DNA from: Salisapilia sapeloensis CBS 127946
Taxonomy: Eukaryota; Protista; Oomycota
Assembly: GCA_023334545.1 (NCBI GenBank)
Contig: JAADVB010000041.1
Span: 36,500-100,499 of the forward strand
DNA length: 64,000 bases
Direction of reading: 5' to 3'
The position numbers were made by a program, and so were the translations under genes. The notes under the pieces were generated by a model that was given only the letters and a program-made list of their open reading frames with translations, did not search any database and was not told the origin of the DNA. This document shows positions 35,790 through 40,873 of the stretch, piece by piece (the stretch's first letter is position 1; each line of letters begins with the position of its first letter).

Positions 35790-38700
35790 ATGACGAGTCC
35801 TATATGGACCTCGTGGACGTGCACACAAGTTGGCGACTGGCTCGAGTCACGTGGCTTGCAGAAATATCGACAGGTTGGTCGATTTAAGCTGTCTCCTTAT
35901 CAACCCATTTGCTTATCATGCGATGCATAGGTCTTTCAAGAAAATGAAATTGCGGGAGGTACGCTCGTATTATGTTACGCTCATATCTGTAAATACCTCA
36001 TTATGTGCTGATAGACATTCTCCCAGCACTCACGCACAATGTCCTCAAGGATGACTTTGGCATTTCTGCCTTTGGTCCTCGCCATCGCATCCTTTCTGCT
36101 ATCAAAGAACTCACATCAGCCCCGCCAACAGCTACTACTCCATCGACCATCTCAACTACCACAAATGAAGTCTTGGAAGAAAAAGTGCCCGTAACCACGC
36201 CAAAAGCATCCTCCGTTCATACAGAGGAAGAAACAGAGACTACCACCCCACCTGTTGAGAGCGAATTGCATCTAGCTGTACTACACGCAGCTCCTCTCGG
36301 AAGCAAGCACCGCAACGGATACTTTTTACCCATGGAAAAACTCGATCTCGAAGCAGAGCGACGTAGCATCACAGACACACTCCTCTCTGACATGCAGCAT
36401 AAAGCCATCCATGTTCGCTTCGACGTTGGCACGCCAGACATCCTTCGTAGCCTCATGACTGCATGGAAATGCCGAGTCCTCCACTTCTCCGGCCATGGCA
36501 TTGGCAGTCGTCCACCTGCACTTGTCTTTGAAGACGGCACCGGCCTTGCACATCCCATCAGTGCCGACACGCTACGTCGATTAACATTCTCTGGACGATT
36601 GCCATCCGGTGACTCGTCCACATCTCCTACAAACAGCCAGCACCTGCAACTGGTCTTTGTCAACTCTTGCCACAGCGAACGCGTTGCTTCCGTCTTTGTC
36701 CACGCAGGTATTCAACACGTCATCGCCGTCCATTCCGACTCGTTGGTCGTAGATGGCACAGCGACGATGTTTGCTAAACACTTTTACCTCTCTCTTTTCT
36801 CCGGAGATACCGTGAAGACCGCATTTGAAATCGCCAAAGCAGCCGTGAGTGCCCAACCTCATCAGAAACGAGCTGCTTGTTGCTGCGCGCACCTTCACGA
36901 GCCCAATTGTTCTTGGGTCAAGAACGGACAGCGCCATTCCCAGCACTCATCGGATGCTTGTTGCTGCAAAGGCCACGCTCTTCCGTTTCCACATGACGAG
37001 TCTAGTAAATTCCTCTTACTAGGTGGAGACGGGTCAGCCGATGCGCATGAAGTAGCATTATTCAAAGACCTGCCGAATGGAGAGCTCGTCGACCACACAC
37101 CTCATAGTCCTTCTTTTATTCCGAGCATGCACGGTCTCTTCATCGGTCGTCACTATGAAACCTCTTTGCTCGTCAAGTCCTTGCTCCGCAACCCTGTGAC
37201 GACGTGCATGGGCGCACCTGGTATCGGCAAGTCGTCGCTCGCCATCTCTGTCGCCCACTTTGTCCACAACCGTCATGTTTTCCCCGACGGTGTCTTTTAC
37301 GTTGATTTAGAAGGCCACAAGCCCTCGACGTTGCGCTACGCTATTGTTCACAGTGCCGGTCTCGCTCCTGCCGATACAGATGAAGCTCTCTTTGCCGCGC
37401 TTAGTCGTATGCGCTGCGTTCTGGTCTTGGATAAGCTAGAGGAAGTCTTGGACGATGATGAGCCCAAGTGTCTCGAACTGCTCAGTCGCATGCTGTCTGC
37501 AGCTCACCACCTGCGTCTTCTTATCGTGTCTAGACGTATGCCTCACTTGCCAAACTACGTCAACACATACGAGTTGTCTTTGGAACAACTGCCTACACGT
37601 CAAGCAATGGAGCTTGTACGTCTCGGAGCTCCGTCCTGTTCTCCTGCGAACGCAGAGCGACTAGCACAGCTCTGTGGGTGCTTGCCTCTCGCCATTCGCG
37701 TCGTCGGTCGAGCACTGACAAATTCTCGTATGATCCTGACACCAGAGCAGATGATCCAGTACTTGGAAATGGATGAACGTCGGTTTGAAAACATAAAGAA
37801 TCTCAACCAAGCTGGACAGAAAGAGTGTATTGACCGATGCATTGGATCCTCGTTCTGTCATCTTGATGAGCCTTTGCAATTAGCATTCCTCGCATTCGGA
37901 TTCTTTCGATGCAGCTTTGATTTAGCAGCTGCCACCGCCGTCTTATCACCAGGAGGAGCAAGTAACGGACAGCGGATCCTGCGACATCATTCCAGCAGTG
38001 GCAGTAGCAGTGACATGTTGGGATCCACTACAATGACTGTCACGACGACATCGACAACGTCTCCTACATCTCTCTTTCCTAGCTACGCCTATGGTCGAGC
38101 TCGATCGAGAGCCGAGGAAGAAGACGTTGGAGGTAAGAACTTGGGCGCGCAGTTGTCTCTGTTGGATAGTTTCAACTACGAGTTCCAGGGGGTCTTTTCA
38201 AGCGAAGGGTACGACCTATTAGATGGAGAGACGAGTGACGAAGTCAAGGCTCGAGACGTCGCTGTCCCACTCTCTAGCACAGCATTAAAGCTGCTTCGAC
38301 AATGGTCTCTCGTAGAGTACGACCGACGCTTGAACAAGTATCGGATGCACAACCTCGTCCAGCTCTTTGCAAAGAAAGAGGCTAATCGACTGGATGATGA
38401 CATTGGCCAAGAATCTTGGACCGACGTGGAGACACCAGCAGTGCGTCCTTCGTCTCCGGTTCAACCACGTCCAACAACCTTCCCACTTGGAAAGGAGCTC
38501 GTGCATACGTGGAAGAGGCGCTTCGTACGCTACTATTGTCTTATCGTGTCGAAAGCCTCTCATGCCTACCGCTTCGATGGTGTCTTGGAGCAGTTCGATC
38601 GAGAGCGTGCAAACATCGACTCTGCTTTGGGACTCGCGGCAGAGCTGACTACGCAGAGTCTAGAGCAGACGAGGGAAGCGCAGCGGCAGAAGCAAGTGGC

Positions 38701-40873
38701 ATTGGAAGAAGACAGTCTACTGCCGACCATGACAGCATCGGGTACAACAGCGAGCAGCGTGACGGTCGATGAAAGCGAGAGCTCTAGCTCAACGTCAGTG
38801 GATGCCTCGATCGTCGACGCTTTGCTGCACTCGAACTTGGTCGTGCGTGCACGCTACATCTTCCGAGCGCGTGTCGAACCTCGTCGGCGCATTCAAGTGT
38901 TGTCAACATGCCTCCAGCTATCGAAAGAGGTGCGTGCTTTAAACTGCAGCTGTGGTAGTCCTGAGAACGAGGCCAGTCGATTGCTATGGGATGTAGAAGA
39001 AGCCAAGTTTGATCGAGAGCTATGGGTCTTGGATGAAATGCCGTCGTATGAGACGCAGCAAGAGCCTTCCACCAAGTCTGATGCATGCTTGTGCACTGGT
39101 ATCCGAGAACTAATTGCACTCGAGACGATGATTTTGACCGACTTAGGGTATGCCTGTAGTGATGTGAACGATTACGTTGCTGCAGAGTACCATTACCTCG
39201 AAGCGATGCGTCTCCAGTGTGAAGTCTTGGGCTGGAGTGAGAACGTTCAGGTCGCAGAGGTGCTAAACCAGTTCGGTATCTGTCTTAGCACTCGTTCTGG
39301 GAGCACAGCGAATAACTCGTGGCTGCTGTACCATGCAGAGAGACTGCTGAAAGGTGGTCTGCATGTTCGAGAGAGAGTGTTGGGCGACACACACCCAGAG
39401 TATGCTACGAGTCTAAACAACTTGGCCAACTTTTATAAAAACTTTGGCACATCCTCTACACAGGCCAAAGGACGTTTGCTCGGACGTAGCAAGAGTCTTG
39501 CACCTAGCGGTAGTAGCTTTAACGATGGTGAGTACGTACATATGTCGTCGAATAGTCTTGACGACATGGACGTCGACTGTAGTCGGACGGATAGTGACGT
39601 GACGTCCAGCACGGACAGCAATTCCATCTTTAACACATCGGACGACTCAGATCAGCCTCGTATCCGTCCTGATGCAGAGAATCTTTATCGACTGTCATTA
39701 AAGATTCGAGAGCAAAAACTCGGATCGAAGCACCCACAAGTAGGCGCAAGTCTCAATAACCTCGCGACGCACCTATCGCATGAATTTTCCAAGAACTCGT
39801 CCAAGATGTCCGACGCGATTAAAGCAAAAAAACGTGCCGAGATCGGTCGACTATTTGCACGTGCACTGGACATTCGAAAGACATCGCTCGGAAATGCTAG
39901 CTTGGAGACGGCCGCGACGCTTAGCAACATGGGCAACTTCAAACGCATGTCGGGAGACTATGCTGGTGCCGAGGCGGACATTAAGCAGGCGTTGCACATA
40001 ACAGACCAGTACTACACTGGCGTTAGTCCGAGGTCTGCGAGATACTATATCAACCTAGCAAAGGTATATAAGGAGCAGTCTCGCTTTCGAGACGCAGCAG
40101 CTCAGTTTGCAAAGGCAAGAGATATACGACAAGAGTTCTTTCCAGACCCTCAGGACGTTGGCTATTGCATCCAACAAATGGGCAAGTGCCTCCAATTGGC
40201 TGGAGAAAAGGAGGAGAGCGAGCGATTACTTCGAGAAGCAAAGGAGTTGCGTTTTAACCAAGTACGACTCGCTCAAGCGGATGGCGCCGAGATGAATGCT
40301 GCAGAGCACATTGTGGACCATGTCGACATCACGGATGTCCTTCCGGCGGATGTACTTGCTCATCGTAAGTTTAAATTCGCTGGACGCTTGATTGGACAGA
40401 GTGGGATCAATATCAAGCGTATTGAAGCGATTACGTGTGCTCAAGTGCACTACAGTACTCCGAATAGTAAGAAGGTGAAGAAGACAGGAAAGGAAGAACA
40501 TGAGGCACCTAGCACGAGGATACGGATTACTGGTGCGACGCCACAGATGGTGGAACGAGCGAAAGAACAGTGCGTTGCGCTCATAAAGGATATTAAAATT
40601 CGATGGGAAAACTTTCAACGTCATGGTGGCCGTCGGGCAGATGACATGGCATCAGGCAGAGGATATATGCAAAGTGGAAGAGGTCGTGGACGAGGGAGAC
40701 AGTCGTCTGGCTCTTTCTTGTCAAGTGGAGGAACGAGTAGTCACTTTTCGTTTCAGGAACATGAGTGGCCTACGCCTGAAGCATCCAGTCGAAGTGGTAG
40801 TGACTGGAATCGAGCGAAAGGTACCCGGCATGGCGCACCTCGACGTCGACCGAGCCATAAGCATCATTTATAA
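35790..40873 (+). CDS. SAM-CHAT-NB-ARC(STAND)-TPR-KH protein, 1656 aa (NLR-like caspase-family protease)
   Basis: Exons 35790-35873, 35931-35958 and 36015-40873 build the SAM domain (WTCTQVGDWLESRGLQKYRQVFQENEIAGDILPALT...LKDDFGISAFGPRHRILSAI). CHAT motifs HFSGHG (~36482) and LVFVNSCHS (Cys 36668). Walker A GAPGIGKS (37211-37234), Walker B VLVLDKLEE, GCLPLAI and MHNLV. TPRs HPEYATSLNNLA and HPQVGASLNNLA. KH motif AGRLIGQSGINIKRI, then an RG-rich tail. Confidence 0.88.

What the first reader, a model, noticed from the sequence alone, without database searches (positions are those of the whole stretch)
35790..40873. SAM-CHAT-STAND-TPR-KH: an NLR-like caspase-family protease with a built-in RNA-binding module
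Seen: one intact 1656-aa gene combining a SAM domain (split over three exons and missed by the ORF track), a CHAT domain with both catalytic residues (His in HFSGHG, Cys in NSCHS), an NB-ARC NTPase (GAPGIGKS, VLVLDKLEE, GCLPLAI), TPRs and a C-terminal KH domain with an RG tail. Established: STAND NTPases oligomerise on ligand sensing to activate N-terminal effectors (Apaf-1, NLRs, bacterial Avs); CHAT is the caspase/separase-related protease used in bacterial defence (e.g. TPR-CHAT/Csx29 of Craspase); SAM can polymerise or bind RNA; KH binds ssRNA. Inference: a one-component RNA- or virus-triggered proteolytic switch for immunity or programmed death in oomycetes, which lack canonical caspases. 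I know of no characterisation of this architecture.
Basis: partly seen in the sequence, partly recalled or inferred. Interest (0 to 1): 0.88.

Follow-up and report, generated by a model that had tools for sequence, protein, structure and literature searches.

The report
Conserved oomycete SAM-CHAT-STAND-TPR-KH protease switch
This is a real, transcribed 1656-residue oomycete gene that joins a caspase-like protease to an ATP-driven switch module, a polymerising SAM domain and an RNA-binding KH domain; nearly every sequenced oomycete has it, nobody has studied it, and it is a testable candidate for a self-contained cell-death or stress switch.

Summary
The gene has three exons (35790-35873, 35931-35958, 36015-40873) and encodes 1656 aa. 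Assembled transcripts from two runs lack both GT..AG introns.

Domains found:
- SAM (Pfam 6e-19).
- CHAT (3e-10). His198 and Cys256 align with the validated H375/C422 dyad of SAVED-CHAT, and the AlphaFold model's best match is that structure.
- An AfsR-like NB-ARC-type STAND NTPase.
- Kinesin-light-chain-type TPRs.
- A type I KH domain with an intact GxxG loop, followed by an RG tail.

The gene is not a diversifying immune receptor. It has one, occasionally two, orthologues per genome across Peronosporales, Pythiales and Saprolegniales. All motifs are invariant, and 32 of 39 differences from a sister taxon are synonymous.

The CHAT-STAND-TPR core is common in bacteria and archaea (up to 42% identity) and is known in fungal NLRs. 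SAM-CHAT-STAND-TPR occurs in another protist. Only the KH domain and an invariant Cys/His insert are specific to oomycetes.

The best reading is an Apaf-1-like switch in which oligomerisation activates the built-in protease. The trigger is conserved and unknown, and an RNA or virus trigger is unproven. The closest parallel in domain logic is SAMD9/9L.

I rate it a new variant of a known kind. The scan's other notes concern this same window, plus two FHA-CHAT-STAND genes elsewhere in this genome.

The parts
35728..35789 (+). 5' untranslated region; the first base seen in transcript contigs is 35728
   Evidence: RNA contigs X1 record 2 and X2 record 4 start at 35728 and 35736. There is no ATG before 35790 in this stretch.
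35790..35873 (+). Exon 1 (aa 1-28), first part of the SAM domain
   Evidence: ATG at 35790, then a GT donor. The junction 35871/35929 is seen in 4 runs.
35874..35930 (+). Intron 1, 57 nt, GT..AG
35931..35958 (+). Exon 2 (28 nt), middle of the SAM domain
35959..36014 (+). Intron 2, 56 nt, GT..AG
36015..40873 (+). Exon 3, the rest of the CDS including the stop codon
   Evidence: The transcript contig is continuous from 36013 to 40828.
35790..36118 (+). SAM domain (aa 1-72, spliced across both introns)
   Evidence: SAM_1 6e-19 and SAM_2 1e-18. The nearest solved relatives are SARM1 SAM (2e-9), SHANK2/3 and tankyrase.
36119..36253 (+). Thr/Pro-rich linker (aa 73-117), poorly conserved
   Evidence: Conservation 0.24-0.39.
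36254..37030 (+). CHAT caspase-like protease domain (aa 118-376), including the Cys/His insert and the terminal KFLLLG strand. Catalytic His198 is at 36494-36496 and Cys256 at 36668-36670.
   Evidence: Pfam CHAT 3e-10. Profile match to 8tl0 at 5e-22 with His and Cys aligned. AF2 model pLDDT 84, pTM 0.85. Foldseek hits: 8tl0 9e-10, then MALT1, caspase-9, Csx29 and Yca1. Cys is invariant and His nearly invariant in 70 homologues.
36878..36973 (+). Invariant Cys/His-rich insert (CCCAHLHE..C.W..G..H..H..CCCKG), probably metal-binding. It sits in the loop between the last CHAT helix and the last CHAT strand.
   Evidence: Invariant in orthologues. Found only in this orthologue group, 38 of 246 fetched proteins. 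Absent from prokaryote-type homologues, where the helix runs straight into KFLLLP. No Pfam family. pLDDT 57-70.
37145..38407 (+). STAND NTPase module (NBD-HD1-WHD, aa ~415-835). Walker A GAPGIGKS is at 37211-37234, Walker B VLVLDKLEE at 37418-37444, GxP GCLPLAI at 37676-37696 and the MHD-like YRMHNLV at 38339-38359. A Ser/Thr-rich low-complexity insert covers aa ~690-790.
   Evidence: Sub-threshold NACHT, nSTAND1 and NB-ARC hits. AfsR NOD at 7e-8 with the single sequence and 2e-15 with the profile, including RYRFHDLV aligned to the MHN motif. The motifs are invariant.
38408..40309 (+). Helical arm and TPR array (aa ~836-1469). The TPRs are kinesin-light-chain type (TPR_10/TPR_12). An unconserved Ser/Asp-rich insert covers aa ~1200-1250.
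   Evidence: TPR_12 5e-25 and TPR_10 1e-19. Profile A5 matches KLC1 at 3e-35 and KLC2 at 5e-28. Conservation 0.46-0.65, but 0.06 in the insert.
40310..40621 (+). Type I KH domain (aa 1470-1573). The GxxG loop IGQSG is at 40391-40405. A long variable loop lies between beta2 and beta'.
   Evidence: KH-I_KHDC4-BBP 7e-9 and KH_1 3e-7. Profile A4 hits IGF2BP3, QKI, Sam68, SF1 and PCBP2. The AF2 model has beta-alpha-alpha-beta-beta-alpha topology with core pLDDT above 90. All 50 best Foldseek matches are KH domains.
40622..40870 (+). Low-complexity basic tail with four RG dipeptides. Not conserved in sequence; orthologues carry His/Arg-rich tails instead.

Best explanation
The gene encodes a self-contained, nucleotide-gated protease switch of the STAND (Apaf-1/NLR-like) type.

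Shown here: it is an intact, spliced, transcribed gene under purifying selection. It encodes, in order, a SAM domain, a CHAT caspase-fold protease with a complete His198/Cys256 dyad, an oomycete-specific Cys/His insert, an AfsR/NB-ARC-like NTPase with intact Walker A, Walker B, GxP and MHD-like motifs, a kinesin-light-chain-type TPR arm, and a type I KH domain.

Inferred mechanism:
1. At rest the NTPase holds ADP through the MHN histidine, the TPR arm keeps the protein closed and monomeric, and the CHAT domain is inactive.
2. A conserved ligand binds the TPR arm. It is most likely a protein or peptide, because these TPRs are of the peptide-binding KLC type. Binding permits nucleotide exchange and oligomerisation of the NTPase. 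Head-to-tail or ring assembly of the SARM1/SHANK/tankyrase-like SAM domain reinforces this.
3. Clustering brings the CHAT domains together and activates them. Caspase-9 on the apoptosome and cA3-induced SAVED-CHAT filaments are activated this way.
4. The active protease cleaves substrates that are still unknown.
5. The KH domain and basic tail place the switch on single-stranded RNA or RNP particles, or add RNA as a co-signal.

The gene is a conserved orthologue in nearly single copy with a conserved sensor arm. The cue is therefore more likely endogenous or universal (stress, development, regulated cell death) than a fast-evolving pathogen molecule.
For: - Gene model and transcription.
- Domains.
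- The catalytic dyad aligns with the experimentally validated H375/C422 of SAVED-CHAT. The offset between chain and native numbering is a constant 20 residues.
- Caspase fold: pLDDT 84; best structural match is 8tl0, followed by MALT1, caspase-9, Csx29 and Yca1.
- His and Cys each sit just after adjacent, confidently modelled beta-strands (E72-79 and E133-137 of the model), as in caspases.
- The NOD aligns with AfsR through the winged helix and the MHD motif.
- All catalytic and nucleotide-binding motifs are invariant from Phytophthora to Saprolegnia.
- Oligomerisation activates the closest solved CHAT protease (preprint 10.1101/2023.06.23.546230).
- The SAM domain is closest to ring- or polymer-forming SAMs.
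- The TPRs are of KLC type.
- The KH fold and GxxG loop are intact.
- Conserved orthologue with 32 synonymous and 7 non-synonymous differences.
- The same core architecture is common in prokaryotes, sometimes with an N-terminal EAD7 adaptor where SAM sits here.
- The domain logic parallels SAMD9: SAM, effector, STAND, TPR, RNA-binding OB fold (PMC5445408).
Against: - There is no biochemical evidence for ATP binding, oligomerisation, proteolysis or RNA binding, and no substrate is known.
- The NTPase falls just under every curated Pfam STAND cut-off.
- The Walker B region reads D-K rather than the usual D-D or D-G.
- The MHD aspartate is replaced by Asn. In plant NLRs, MHD changes often alter autoinhibition.
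- The window's GxxG loop (GQSG) has no basic residue, although most orthologues have one.
- The KH domain and tail are the least conserved parts.
- No partner gene, such as a gasdermin, lies nearby to suggest a death effector.
Confidence: 0.5

Rival explanations
1. This is the first reader's reading: a dedicated innate-immune sensor. Viral or otherwise foreign RNA bound by the KH domain and RG tail is the activating ligand. The result is protease-driven abortive cell death or an antiviral response.
For: - A bona fide KH domain sits at the C-terminal 'sensor' end.
- SAMD9, which has the parallel layout SAM-effector-STAND-TPR-OB, is antiviral and is reported to bind double-stranded nucleic acids (PMC5445408 and PMC12015307).
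- Prokaryotic CHAT proteases and STAND NTPases act in anti-phage defence.
Against: - The gene has one or two copies per genome and shows no lineage-specific expansion.
- The TPR arm is as conserved as the NTPase.
- Purifying selection dominates, 32 synonymous to 7 non-synonymous.
- A single KH domain binds about 4 nt of ssRNA weakly and cannot by itself tell self from non-self (established knowledge of KH domains).
- The RG tail is not conserved.
- There is no evidence of induction by infection.
Confidence: 0.15
2. This is a housekeeping or developmental regulator rather than a death or immune device. The protein resides on RNP particles through its KH domain and tail. It uses the NTPase as a regulated scaffold, and the protease makes limited, specific cuts in RNA-metabolism or life-stage proteins, as separase and MALT1 cut specific targets without killing the cell.
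For: - Orthologues are conserved across more than two oomycete orders with ordinary rates of change.
- Transcript contigs have high word depth in unchallenged libraries (a weak measure).
- AfsR, the closest solved NOD, is a transcription regulator, not a death protein.
- Relatives of the CHAT fold include MALT1, a signalling protease.
Against: The same CHAT-STAND-TPR core in prokaryotes carries conflict-system hallmarks, namely EAD7 adaptors and variable sensors such as FGE-sulfatase. Fungal CHAT-NLRs are linked to gasdermin-mediated death (PMC10197012). No RNA-processing partner has been identified.
Confidence: 0.25
3. This is a non-catalytic scaffold. The CHAT and NTPase domains are retained for structure only, and the protein acts purely as a SAM/TPR/KH adaptor.
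For: The Walker B (D-K) and MHD (MHN) motifs are unusual. Another note from the scan reports a CHAT-STAND gene with a dead CHAT domain elsewhere in this genome (I did not check it).
Against: His198, Cys256, the Walker A lysine, the sensor-like SRR motif and the GxP motif are all invariant across 17 orthologues. The CHAT core is the most conserved part of the protein, at 0.67-0.79.
Confidence: 0.05

Closest known systems
Prokaryotic CHAT-STAND-TPR proteins (uncharacterised conflict-system-type proteins of Chloroflexota, Acidobacteriota, Cyanobacteria and Methanotrichaceae archaea)
   Same: The core has the same order, CHAT protease, STAND NTPase, TPR_12 repeats. The CHAT domain is up to 42% identical, with the same HxSGHG and ACHS motifs and the terminal KFLLL strand.
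   Different: They have no SAM, no KH and no Cys/His insert, and are 860-1140 aa long. Some carry an N-terminal EAD7 adaptor or an FGE-sulfatase sensor instead. None has been characterised experimentally as far as I found.
Fungal NLRs with an N-terminal CHAT protease (partners of fungal gasdermins)
   Same: [quoted passage not shown]
   Different: The fungal genes are variable, often multi-copy, and clustered with a gasdermin gene. This gene is a conserved orthologue with no gasdermin-like neighbour, and it carries SAM and KH domains.
SAVED-CHAT (Haliangium ochraceum type III-B CRISPR, PDB 8tl0)
   Same: It is the closest solved CHAT domain (profile 5e-22, Foldseek 9e-10), and its catalytic H375/C422 align with His198/Cys256. 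Ligand-induced oligomerisation activates the protease.
   Different: Its sensor is a cyclic-oligoadenylate-binding SAVED domain, not a STAND NTPase with TPRs. It is bacterial and about 500 aa long.
[quoted passage not shown]
   Same: They use an NB-ARC-type STAND switch in which oligomerisation activates a caspase-fold protease. They are conserved, low-copy sensors of a conserved cue. The bacterial versions fuse the protease directly to the NTPase (PMC13581612).
   Different: Apaf-1 recruits the protease through a CARD domain and senses through WD40 propellers. This protein has the protease fused, a TPR sensor, and added SAM and KH domains. Its NOD is closer to AfsR than to Apaf-1 in the PDB search.
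SAMD9 / SAMD9L
   Same: The domain logic is the same from N to C terminus: a polymerising SAM, an enzymatic effector, a STAND-like NTPase, a TPR array and a C-terminal predicted RNA-binding domain (PMC5445408).
   Different: The effector is AlbA/Sir2-like rather than CHAT, and the RNA-binding domain is an OB fold rather than KH. The family is found in animals and actinomycetes. I detected no sequence relationship, so the parallel is convergent.
AfsR (Streptomyces SARP regulator, PDB 8k60/8jke)
   Same: It is the best solved match to the NTPase module (2e-15), covering the P-loop, GxP motif, winged helix and MHD motif, and it is followed by TPRs.
   Different: AfsR has an N-terminal DNA-binding SARP/BTAD domain and regulates transcription. 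It has no protease, SAM or KH domain.
TPR-CHAT / Csx29 of Craspase (PDB 7zoq)
   Same: It has the CHAT fold (Foldseek 6e-4) and combines TPRs with a CHAT domain.
   Different: In Csx29 the TPRs are N-terminal, there is no NTPase, and activation comes through the RNA-guided Cas7-11 complex. It is only a distant relative.

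Membership tests
CHAT domain (Pfam PF12770; caspase-hemoglobinase fold, clan CD cysteine peptidases) | Profile score above the curated cut-off | tested here: met
   40.4 bits against a cut-off of 24, E 3e-10, when residues 76-342 of the ORF are scanned alone. 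The family is not listed when the whole ORF is scanned.
CHAT domain (Pfam PF12770; caspase-hemoglobinase fold, clan CD cysteine peptidases) | Catalytic His and Cys at the homologous positions | tested here: met
   His198 and Cys256 align with chain positions 355 and 402 of 8tl0. These correspond to native H375 and C422, whose mutation abolishes activity. Cys is invariant and His nearly invariant in 70 homologues.
CHAT domain (Pfam PF12770; caspase-hemoglobinase fold, clan CD cysteine peptidases) | Caspase-like alpha/beta fold | tested here: met
   AF2 model pLDDT 84, pTM 0.85. Foldseek hits: 8tl0 9e-10, then MALT1, caspase-9, Csx29 and Yca1.
CHAT domain (Pfam PF12770; caspase-hemoglobinase fold, clan CD cysteine peptidases) | Peptidase activity; His-Cys distance compatible with catalysis | not testable with these tools
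STAND NTPase, NB-ARC / AP-ATPase-like clade | Walker A (GxxxxGK[ST]) and Walker B motifs | tested here: met
   GAPGIGKS and hhhhDK..EE are invariant in 17 orthologues. The residue after the Walker B Asp is Lys, which is unusual.
STAND NTPase, NB-ARC / AP-ATPase-like clade | Score above the curated cut-off of a STAND Pfam family | tested here: not met
   NACHT 25.7 vs 26.7, nSTAND1 24.9 vs 27.1, NB-ARC 21.2 vs 23.5. All are just below their cut-offs.
STAND NTPase, NB-ARC / AP-ATPase-like clade | GxP (GLPLA) motif, winged-helix domain and MHD histidine after the NTPase | tested here: met
   GCLPLAI is conserved. Profile A3 aligns with the AfsR NOD at 2e-15, with RYR(M/L)HNLV opposite RYRFHDLV. 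The Asp of MHD is Asn here.
STAND NTPase, NB-ARC / AP-ATPase-like clade | C-terminal superstructure-forming repeats | tested here: met
   TPR_12 5e-25; KLC-type TPRs at 3e-35.
STAND NTPase, NB-ARC / AP-ATPase-like clade | Nucleotide-dependent oligomerisation | not testable with these tools
   This needs recombinant protein.
NLR in the strict sense (NACHT or NB-ARC plus leucine-rich repeats) | LRR sensor domain | tested here: not met
   No LRR family appears in the Pfam scan; the repeats are TPRs. 'NLR-like' is the accurate term.
Type I KH domain | Profile score above the curated cut-off | tested here: met
   KH-I_KHDC4-BBP 35.8 vs 30; KH_1 30.7 vs 21.5.
Type I KH domain | GxxG loop between alpha1 and alpha2 | tested here: met
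   The loop is G-Q-S-G here. Both Gly residues are invariant in 17 sequences.
Type I KH domain | beta-alpha-alpha-beta-beta-alpha fold | tested here: met
   The AF2 model has strands 71-76, 115-119 and 140-145, and helices 83-98, 100-112 and 148-174, with core pLDDT above 90. All 50 top Foldseek hits are KH domains.
Type I KH domain | Binding of single-stranded RNA or DNA | not testable with these tools
   This needs EMSA or CLIP.
SAM domain | Profile score above the curated cut-off | tested here: met
   SAM_1 68.6 vs 23 on the spliced N-terminus.
SAM domain | Polymerisation or ring formation | not testable with these tools
   I can show only that the nearest solved relatives (SARM1, SHANK2/3, tankyrase) polymerise.
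Fungal-type CHAT-NLR / gasdermin two-gene cluster | Gasdermin gene within about 10 kb | tested here: not met
   No gasdermin family was found in the flanking ORFs of the window. None is listed in the 10-kb flanks of the Pythium oligandrum and Saprolegnia parasitica orthologues. Small or intron-rich genes could have been missed.
SAMD9/SAMD9L family | AlbA_2 and Sir2-like effector domains, SAMD9-type NTPase, C-terminal OB fold | tested here: not met
   None of these appears in the Pfam scan, and the NOD profile matched no SAMD9 chain. The resemblance is one of layout only.
Craspase TPR-CHAT (Csx29) | N-terminal TPR followed by CHAT, with association to a type III-E Cas7-11 effector | tested here: not met
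   The domain order is reversed, an NTPase is present, and the gene is eukaryotic. The only link is a distant fold match to 7zoq at 6e-4.

The most novel reading that the evidence does not exclude
The protein is an RNA-gated 'all-in-one apoptosome'. Binding of aberrant or viral single-stranded RNA by the KH domain and basic tail, together with the TPR arm, releases the STAND switch. SAM-assisted oligomers then activate the built-in caspase-like protease and execute cell death in oomycetes. On this reading it is a convergent counterpart of animal SAMD9/9L and of bacterial Avs and SAVED-CHAT systems, and the first defined death or innate-immune executioner in a group that lacks caspases.
Probability: 0.12. 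Interest if true: 0.85.

Novelty: new variant of a known kind. Interest (0 to 1): 0.58.

Why it matters
Oomycetes include major crop and fish pathogens, and how they control regulated cell death or respond to their own viruses is essentially unknown. This gene is a single, conserved, expressed candidate with clear catalytic residues to mutate, so the question becomes directly testable.

For the evolution of immunity and apoptosis, the gene shows three things. A prokaryotic protease-STAND-TPR module was kept in a eukaryotic lineage. It gained a polymerising SAM domain before the oomycetes diverged, because the SAM is shared with another protist. Later it gained an RNA-binding KH domain and a Cys/His module. 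The end result has the same layout as animal SAMD9/9L, reached independently.

A STAND NTPase carrying a KH domain has not, as far as I could find, been described.

Tried and rejected
- Whole-ORF Pfam scan: it did not list CHAT. Scanning the region alone recovered it, so the miss was a filter effect and not absence of the domain.
- Literature: searches for 'CHAT domain' plus oomycete, for eight orthologue locus tags, and for CHAT/NB-ARC/TPR/protists found no description of this protein.
- Gasdermin-like or other conserved partner next to the gene: none found. The only recurrent neighbour is a RabGAP-TBC gene, adjacent in Pythium and Saprolegnia but about 19 kb away here. I treat this as residual synteny, not a functional link.
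- Cys/His insert: it matched no Pfam family even at E = 10.
- The first search for related loci attempt, with the 70-sequence alignment, failed for lack of a conserved stretch. A narrower alignment worked.
- RNA-binding SAM (Smaug/Vts1 type): rejected, because the nearest solved relatives are polymerising SAMs.
- Membership in the SAMD9 family, Craspase or strict NLRs: rejected on defining features (see the membership tests).
- I did not rank expression by contig depth, because the tool warns against it.
- I could not measure the His-Cys distance, because model coordinates are not exposed.
- The tree is a quick search with long branches and no root. I use it only to place the window among the orthologues and to identify its starred nearest outgroups, not to infer a donor.

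Full report

Yes. A single open reading frame runs from 36005 to 40873 on the + strand and encodes 1622 aa. G+C rises to 0.50-0.55 inside it, against about 0.44 upstream.

Upstream there is an ATG at 35790. It is followed by two short exons that are separated from the long ORF by GT..AG introns of 57 and 56 nt.

The model does not rest on inference alone. Transcript contigs of two runs from organism A cover 35728-40828 with exactly these two introns removed. Contigs of a roughly 96%-identical relative (organism B) show the same junctions.

**2. Domains**

- SAM. The spliced N-terminus is a SAM domain (SAM_1 6e-19).
- CHAT. Residues 118-376 form a CHAT domain. Pfam PF12770 gives 3e-10 when the region is scanned alone. 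The whole-ORF scan had dropped it.
  - A profile of 70 homologues matches PDB 8tl0 at 5e-22. A preprint identifies 8tl0 as the activated SAVED-CHAT filament.
  - In that alignment His198 (in HFSGHG) and Cys256 (in NSCHS) fall on chain positions 355 and 402. These correspond to native H375 and C422 with a constant offset of 20. The H375A/C422A mutant is inactive, and the two residues lie about 4 A apart in the active filament.
  - The AlphaFold2 model of residues 118-425 has mean pLDDT 84 and pTM 0.85, with the core above 90. His and Cys each follow one of two adjacent strands, as in caspases.
  - Its best PDB matches are SAVED-CHAT (9e-10), then MALT1, caspase-9, Csx29, yeast metacaspase and CED-3.
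- NTPase. It has GAPGIGKS (Walker A), VLVLDKLEE (Walker B), SRR, GCLPLAI (GxP) and YRMHNLV (MHD-like).
  - It scores just under the curated cut-offs of NACHT, nSTAND1 and NB-ARC.
  - An orthologue profile aligns with the NOD of Streptomyces AfsR at 2e-15, through the winged helix and with the MHD motifs opposite each other.
  - I therefore call it an AfsR/NB-ARC-like STAND NTPase rather than a certified Pfam NB-ARC.
- TPR. The repeats are kinesin-light-chain-type TPRs (TPR_12 5e-25; KLC1 3e-35). This class binds short peptides.
- KH. The C-terminus is a type I KH domain.
  - Two Pfam KH families score above their cut-offs.
  - The profile hits IGF2BP3, Quaking, Sam68, SF1 and PCBP2.
  - The AF2 model has beta-alpha-alpha-beta-beta-alpha topology with core pLDDT above 90.
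  - All 50 best Foldseek matches are KH domains.
- Tail. Four RG dipeptides follow the KH domain.

**3. What the relatives say**

*Orthologues.* Full-length orthologues with the same architecture exist in Phytophthora, Pythium, Globisporangium, Lagenidium and Nothophytophthora (50-54% identity). They also exist in Saprolegnia, Achlya, Thraustotheca and Aphanomyces (38-39%). Most species have one copy. Pythium insidiosum and Aphanomyces stellatus have two. All are named only 'hypothetical' or 'SAM domain-containing protein'.

*Placement of the window.* In a tree of the CHAT and NOD regions, the window sits in a strongly supported orthologue clade. It lies outside the Pythium/Lagenidium/Globisporangium/Phytophthora group but on their side of the split from Saprolegniales. 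I infer that the window comes from an early-branching peronosporomycete.

*Conservation.*
- All catalytic and nucleotide-binding motifs and the KH GxxG glycines are conserved.
- Conservation is highest in the CHAT core (0.67-0.79). The NTPase (0.52-0.65) and the TPR arm (0.46-0.65) are similar to each other. The KH domain (0.24-0.30) and the tail (0.1) are lowest.
- Of the 39 listed coding differences from organism B, 32 are synonymous.

This profile is that of a conserved core gene, not a diversifying receptor.

*Relatives outside oomycetes.*
- The CHAT-STAND-TPR core is abundant (19,146 hits at E <= 1e-3).
- It occurs in ciliates, a foraminifer and Bigelowiella.
- It occurs in many bacteria and in Methanotrichaceae archaea, with up to 42% identity in the CHAT domain.
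- The prokaryotic proteins are 860-1140 aa long and have the order CHAT, STAND, TPR. Variants carry an N-terminal EAD7 adaptor or an FGE-sulfatase sensor.
- SAM directly upstream of CHAT recurs in several non-oomycete proteins. One is a EukProt transcript with SAM-CHAT-NB-ARC-TPR but no KH. That transcript and a metagenomic protein are the starred nearest outgroups of the oomycete clade.
- The KH domain is confined to the oomycete orthologues, apart from one weak metagenomic hit.
- The invariant Cys/His module CCCAHLHE..C.W..G..H..H..CCCKG is confined to the orthologue group.
- That module is inserted in the loop between the last CHAT helix and the terminal KFLLL strand. In prokaryote-type proteins this loop is short. 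The module matches no Pfam family and is probably a metal site.

The likely order of events is an old CHAT-STAND-TPR module, then the gain of SAM, then the gain of the insert and the KH domain before the oomycete orders split. The tree is unrooted, so this order is an inference.

**4. Surroundings**

- Upstream, a divergent gene on the minus strand (ORF 33570-35072 and further exons) has no Pfam match.
- Downstream lies a WD40 gene.
- No gasdermin-like gene lies near the window gene or near the Pythium oligandrum and Saprolegnia orthologues.
- A RabGAP-TBC gene is adjacent in those two species and about 19 kb away here. I read this as residual synteny.

**5. How it most likely works**

*Shown:*
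- an intact, expressed and conserved gene;
- a complete caspase-type dyad in a confidently modelled fold;
- intact nucleotide-binding motifs;
- a peptide-type TPR arm;
- a polymerising-type SAM domain, nearest to SARM1, SHANK2/3 and tankyrase;
- a KH fold with its nucleic-acid loop.

*Inferred, from how STAND proteins and the nearest CHAT protease work:*
1. The resting form is closed and ADP-bound.
2. Ligand binding on the TPR arm allows nucleotide exchange and oligomerisation. SAM-SAM contacts reinforce the assembly.
3. Clustered CHAT domains become active and cleave unknown substrates.
4. The KH domain and basic tail tether the switch to RNA or RNPs, or add RNA as a co-signal.

Because the sensor arm is conserved and the gene is nearly single-copy, I favour a conserved cue and an Apaf-1-like role in regulated death or stress (confidence 0.5).

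*Rivals:*
- An RNP-associated signalling or processing protease that is not lethal (0.25).
- A non-catalytic scaffold (0.05).

*Points against my own reading:*
- There is no biochemistry.
- The STAND Pfam scores are sub-threshold.
- The Walker B region reads D-K, and the MHD aspartate is Asn.
- GQSG has no basic residue.
- I could not measure the dyad distance.

**6. Comparison with what is known**

- The gene is a member of the CHAT family and of the STAND NTPases in the broad sense.
- It is NLR-like but not an NLR in the strict sense, because it has no LRR.
- Protease-bearing STANDs are already described. Fungal NLRs with CHAT activate gasdermins (PMC10197012). [quoted passage not shown]
- The closest parallel in overall logic is the SAMD9 family: a polymerising SAM, an enzymatic effector, a STAND-like NTPase, TPRs and a C-terminal predicted RNA-binding OB fold (PMC5445408). 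I found no sequence relationship to it, so the similarity is convergent.
- I found no paper on this protein or on any of eight orthologue locus tags.

**7. Verdict**

The gene is a new variant of a known kind: a conserved eukaryotic protease-STAND switch that has acquired SAM, a Cys/His module and a KH domain. It is worth experimental follow-up in oomycetes. The immune, RNA-trigger story remains a hypothesis.

Other notes from the scan cover parts of this same gene: the KH domain, the CCC insert and the MHN motif. I checked all three. Two further notes report FHA-CHAT-STAND genes elsewhere in this genome, which I did not check.

Noticed in passing
window 36878-36973: There is an invariant twin-CCC Cys/His module with seven Cys and about five His. 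It is inserted in a CHAT surface loop, is unique to the oomycete orthologue group, and matches no Pfam family. It is probably a zinc site of unknown role next to the protease.
   Followed up: partly
window 35500-35744 (minus-strand neighbour) against 35728 (start of this gene's transcript): Transcript contigs of the divergent upstream gene reach 35666 and 35744. This gene's contigs start at 35728 and 35736. The two head-to-head transcription units therefore abut or overlap by a few bases, leaving an extremely compact bidirectional promoter region.
   Followed up: no
window 59502-60614: A RabGAP-TBC homologue lies here. The orthologous gene sits directly beside the SAM-CHAT-STAND-KH gene in Pythium oligandrum (L001 16583-18176) and within 1.5 kb in Saprolegnia parasitica (L002 7006-8477). 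This looks like residual synteny across oomycete orders.
   Followed up: partly
window 33570-35342, minus strand: The upstream divergent gene has a 500-aa ORF and further exons with no Pfam match. Another note from the scan calls it a helical-repeat gene of about 4 kb.
   Followed up: no
L004, L006, L007 (Methanotrichaceae / Methanothrix MAGs), match at 5001-5570: Archaeal CHAT-NB-ARC-TPR proteins of about 970 aa have CHAT domains 39-41% identical to the oomycete one. That is unusually high for a comparison across domains of life and hints at horizontal spread of the module.
   Followed up: partly
L009 4698-7835, L019 56-3478, L015 4917-7769: These are prokaryotic variants of the same core. 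Two are EAD7-CHAT-STAND-TPR, with an adaptor domain where the oomycete protein has SAM. One cyanobacterial protein is CHAT-NB-ARC-FGE-sulfatase.
   Followed up: partly
P0043-P0063 (oomycete proteins of about 1350 aa): Oomycetes have a second CHAT-NACHT-TPR family without SAM, insert or KH. In the tree it groups with Bigelowiella, apart from the SAM-KH family. Oomycetes therefore hold at least two independent CHAT-STAND lineages.
   Followed up: partly
P0038 (Aphanomyces stellatus, 2728 aa); P0004 and P0017 (Pythium insidiosum, same contig): One annotated orthologue is fused to protein-kinase domains, which may be a real fusion or merged gene models. Pythium insidiosum has two paralogues about ten gene numbers apart on one contig.
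   Followed up: no
window 37418-37444 and 38339-38359: The Walker B region reads hhhhD-K-x-E-E, with Lys after the Asp and an acidic pair downstream as in NACHT proteins. The MHD motif reads MHN, or LHN in Saprolegniales. The STAND module thus mixes NACHT-like and NB-ARC-like features, which may explain why it falls under all three Pfam cut-offs.
   Followed up: partly
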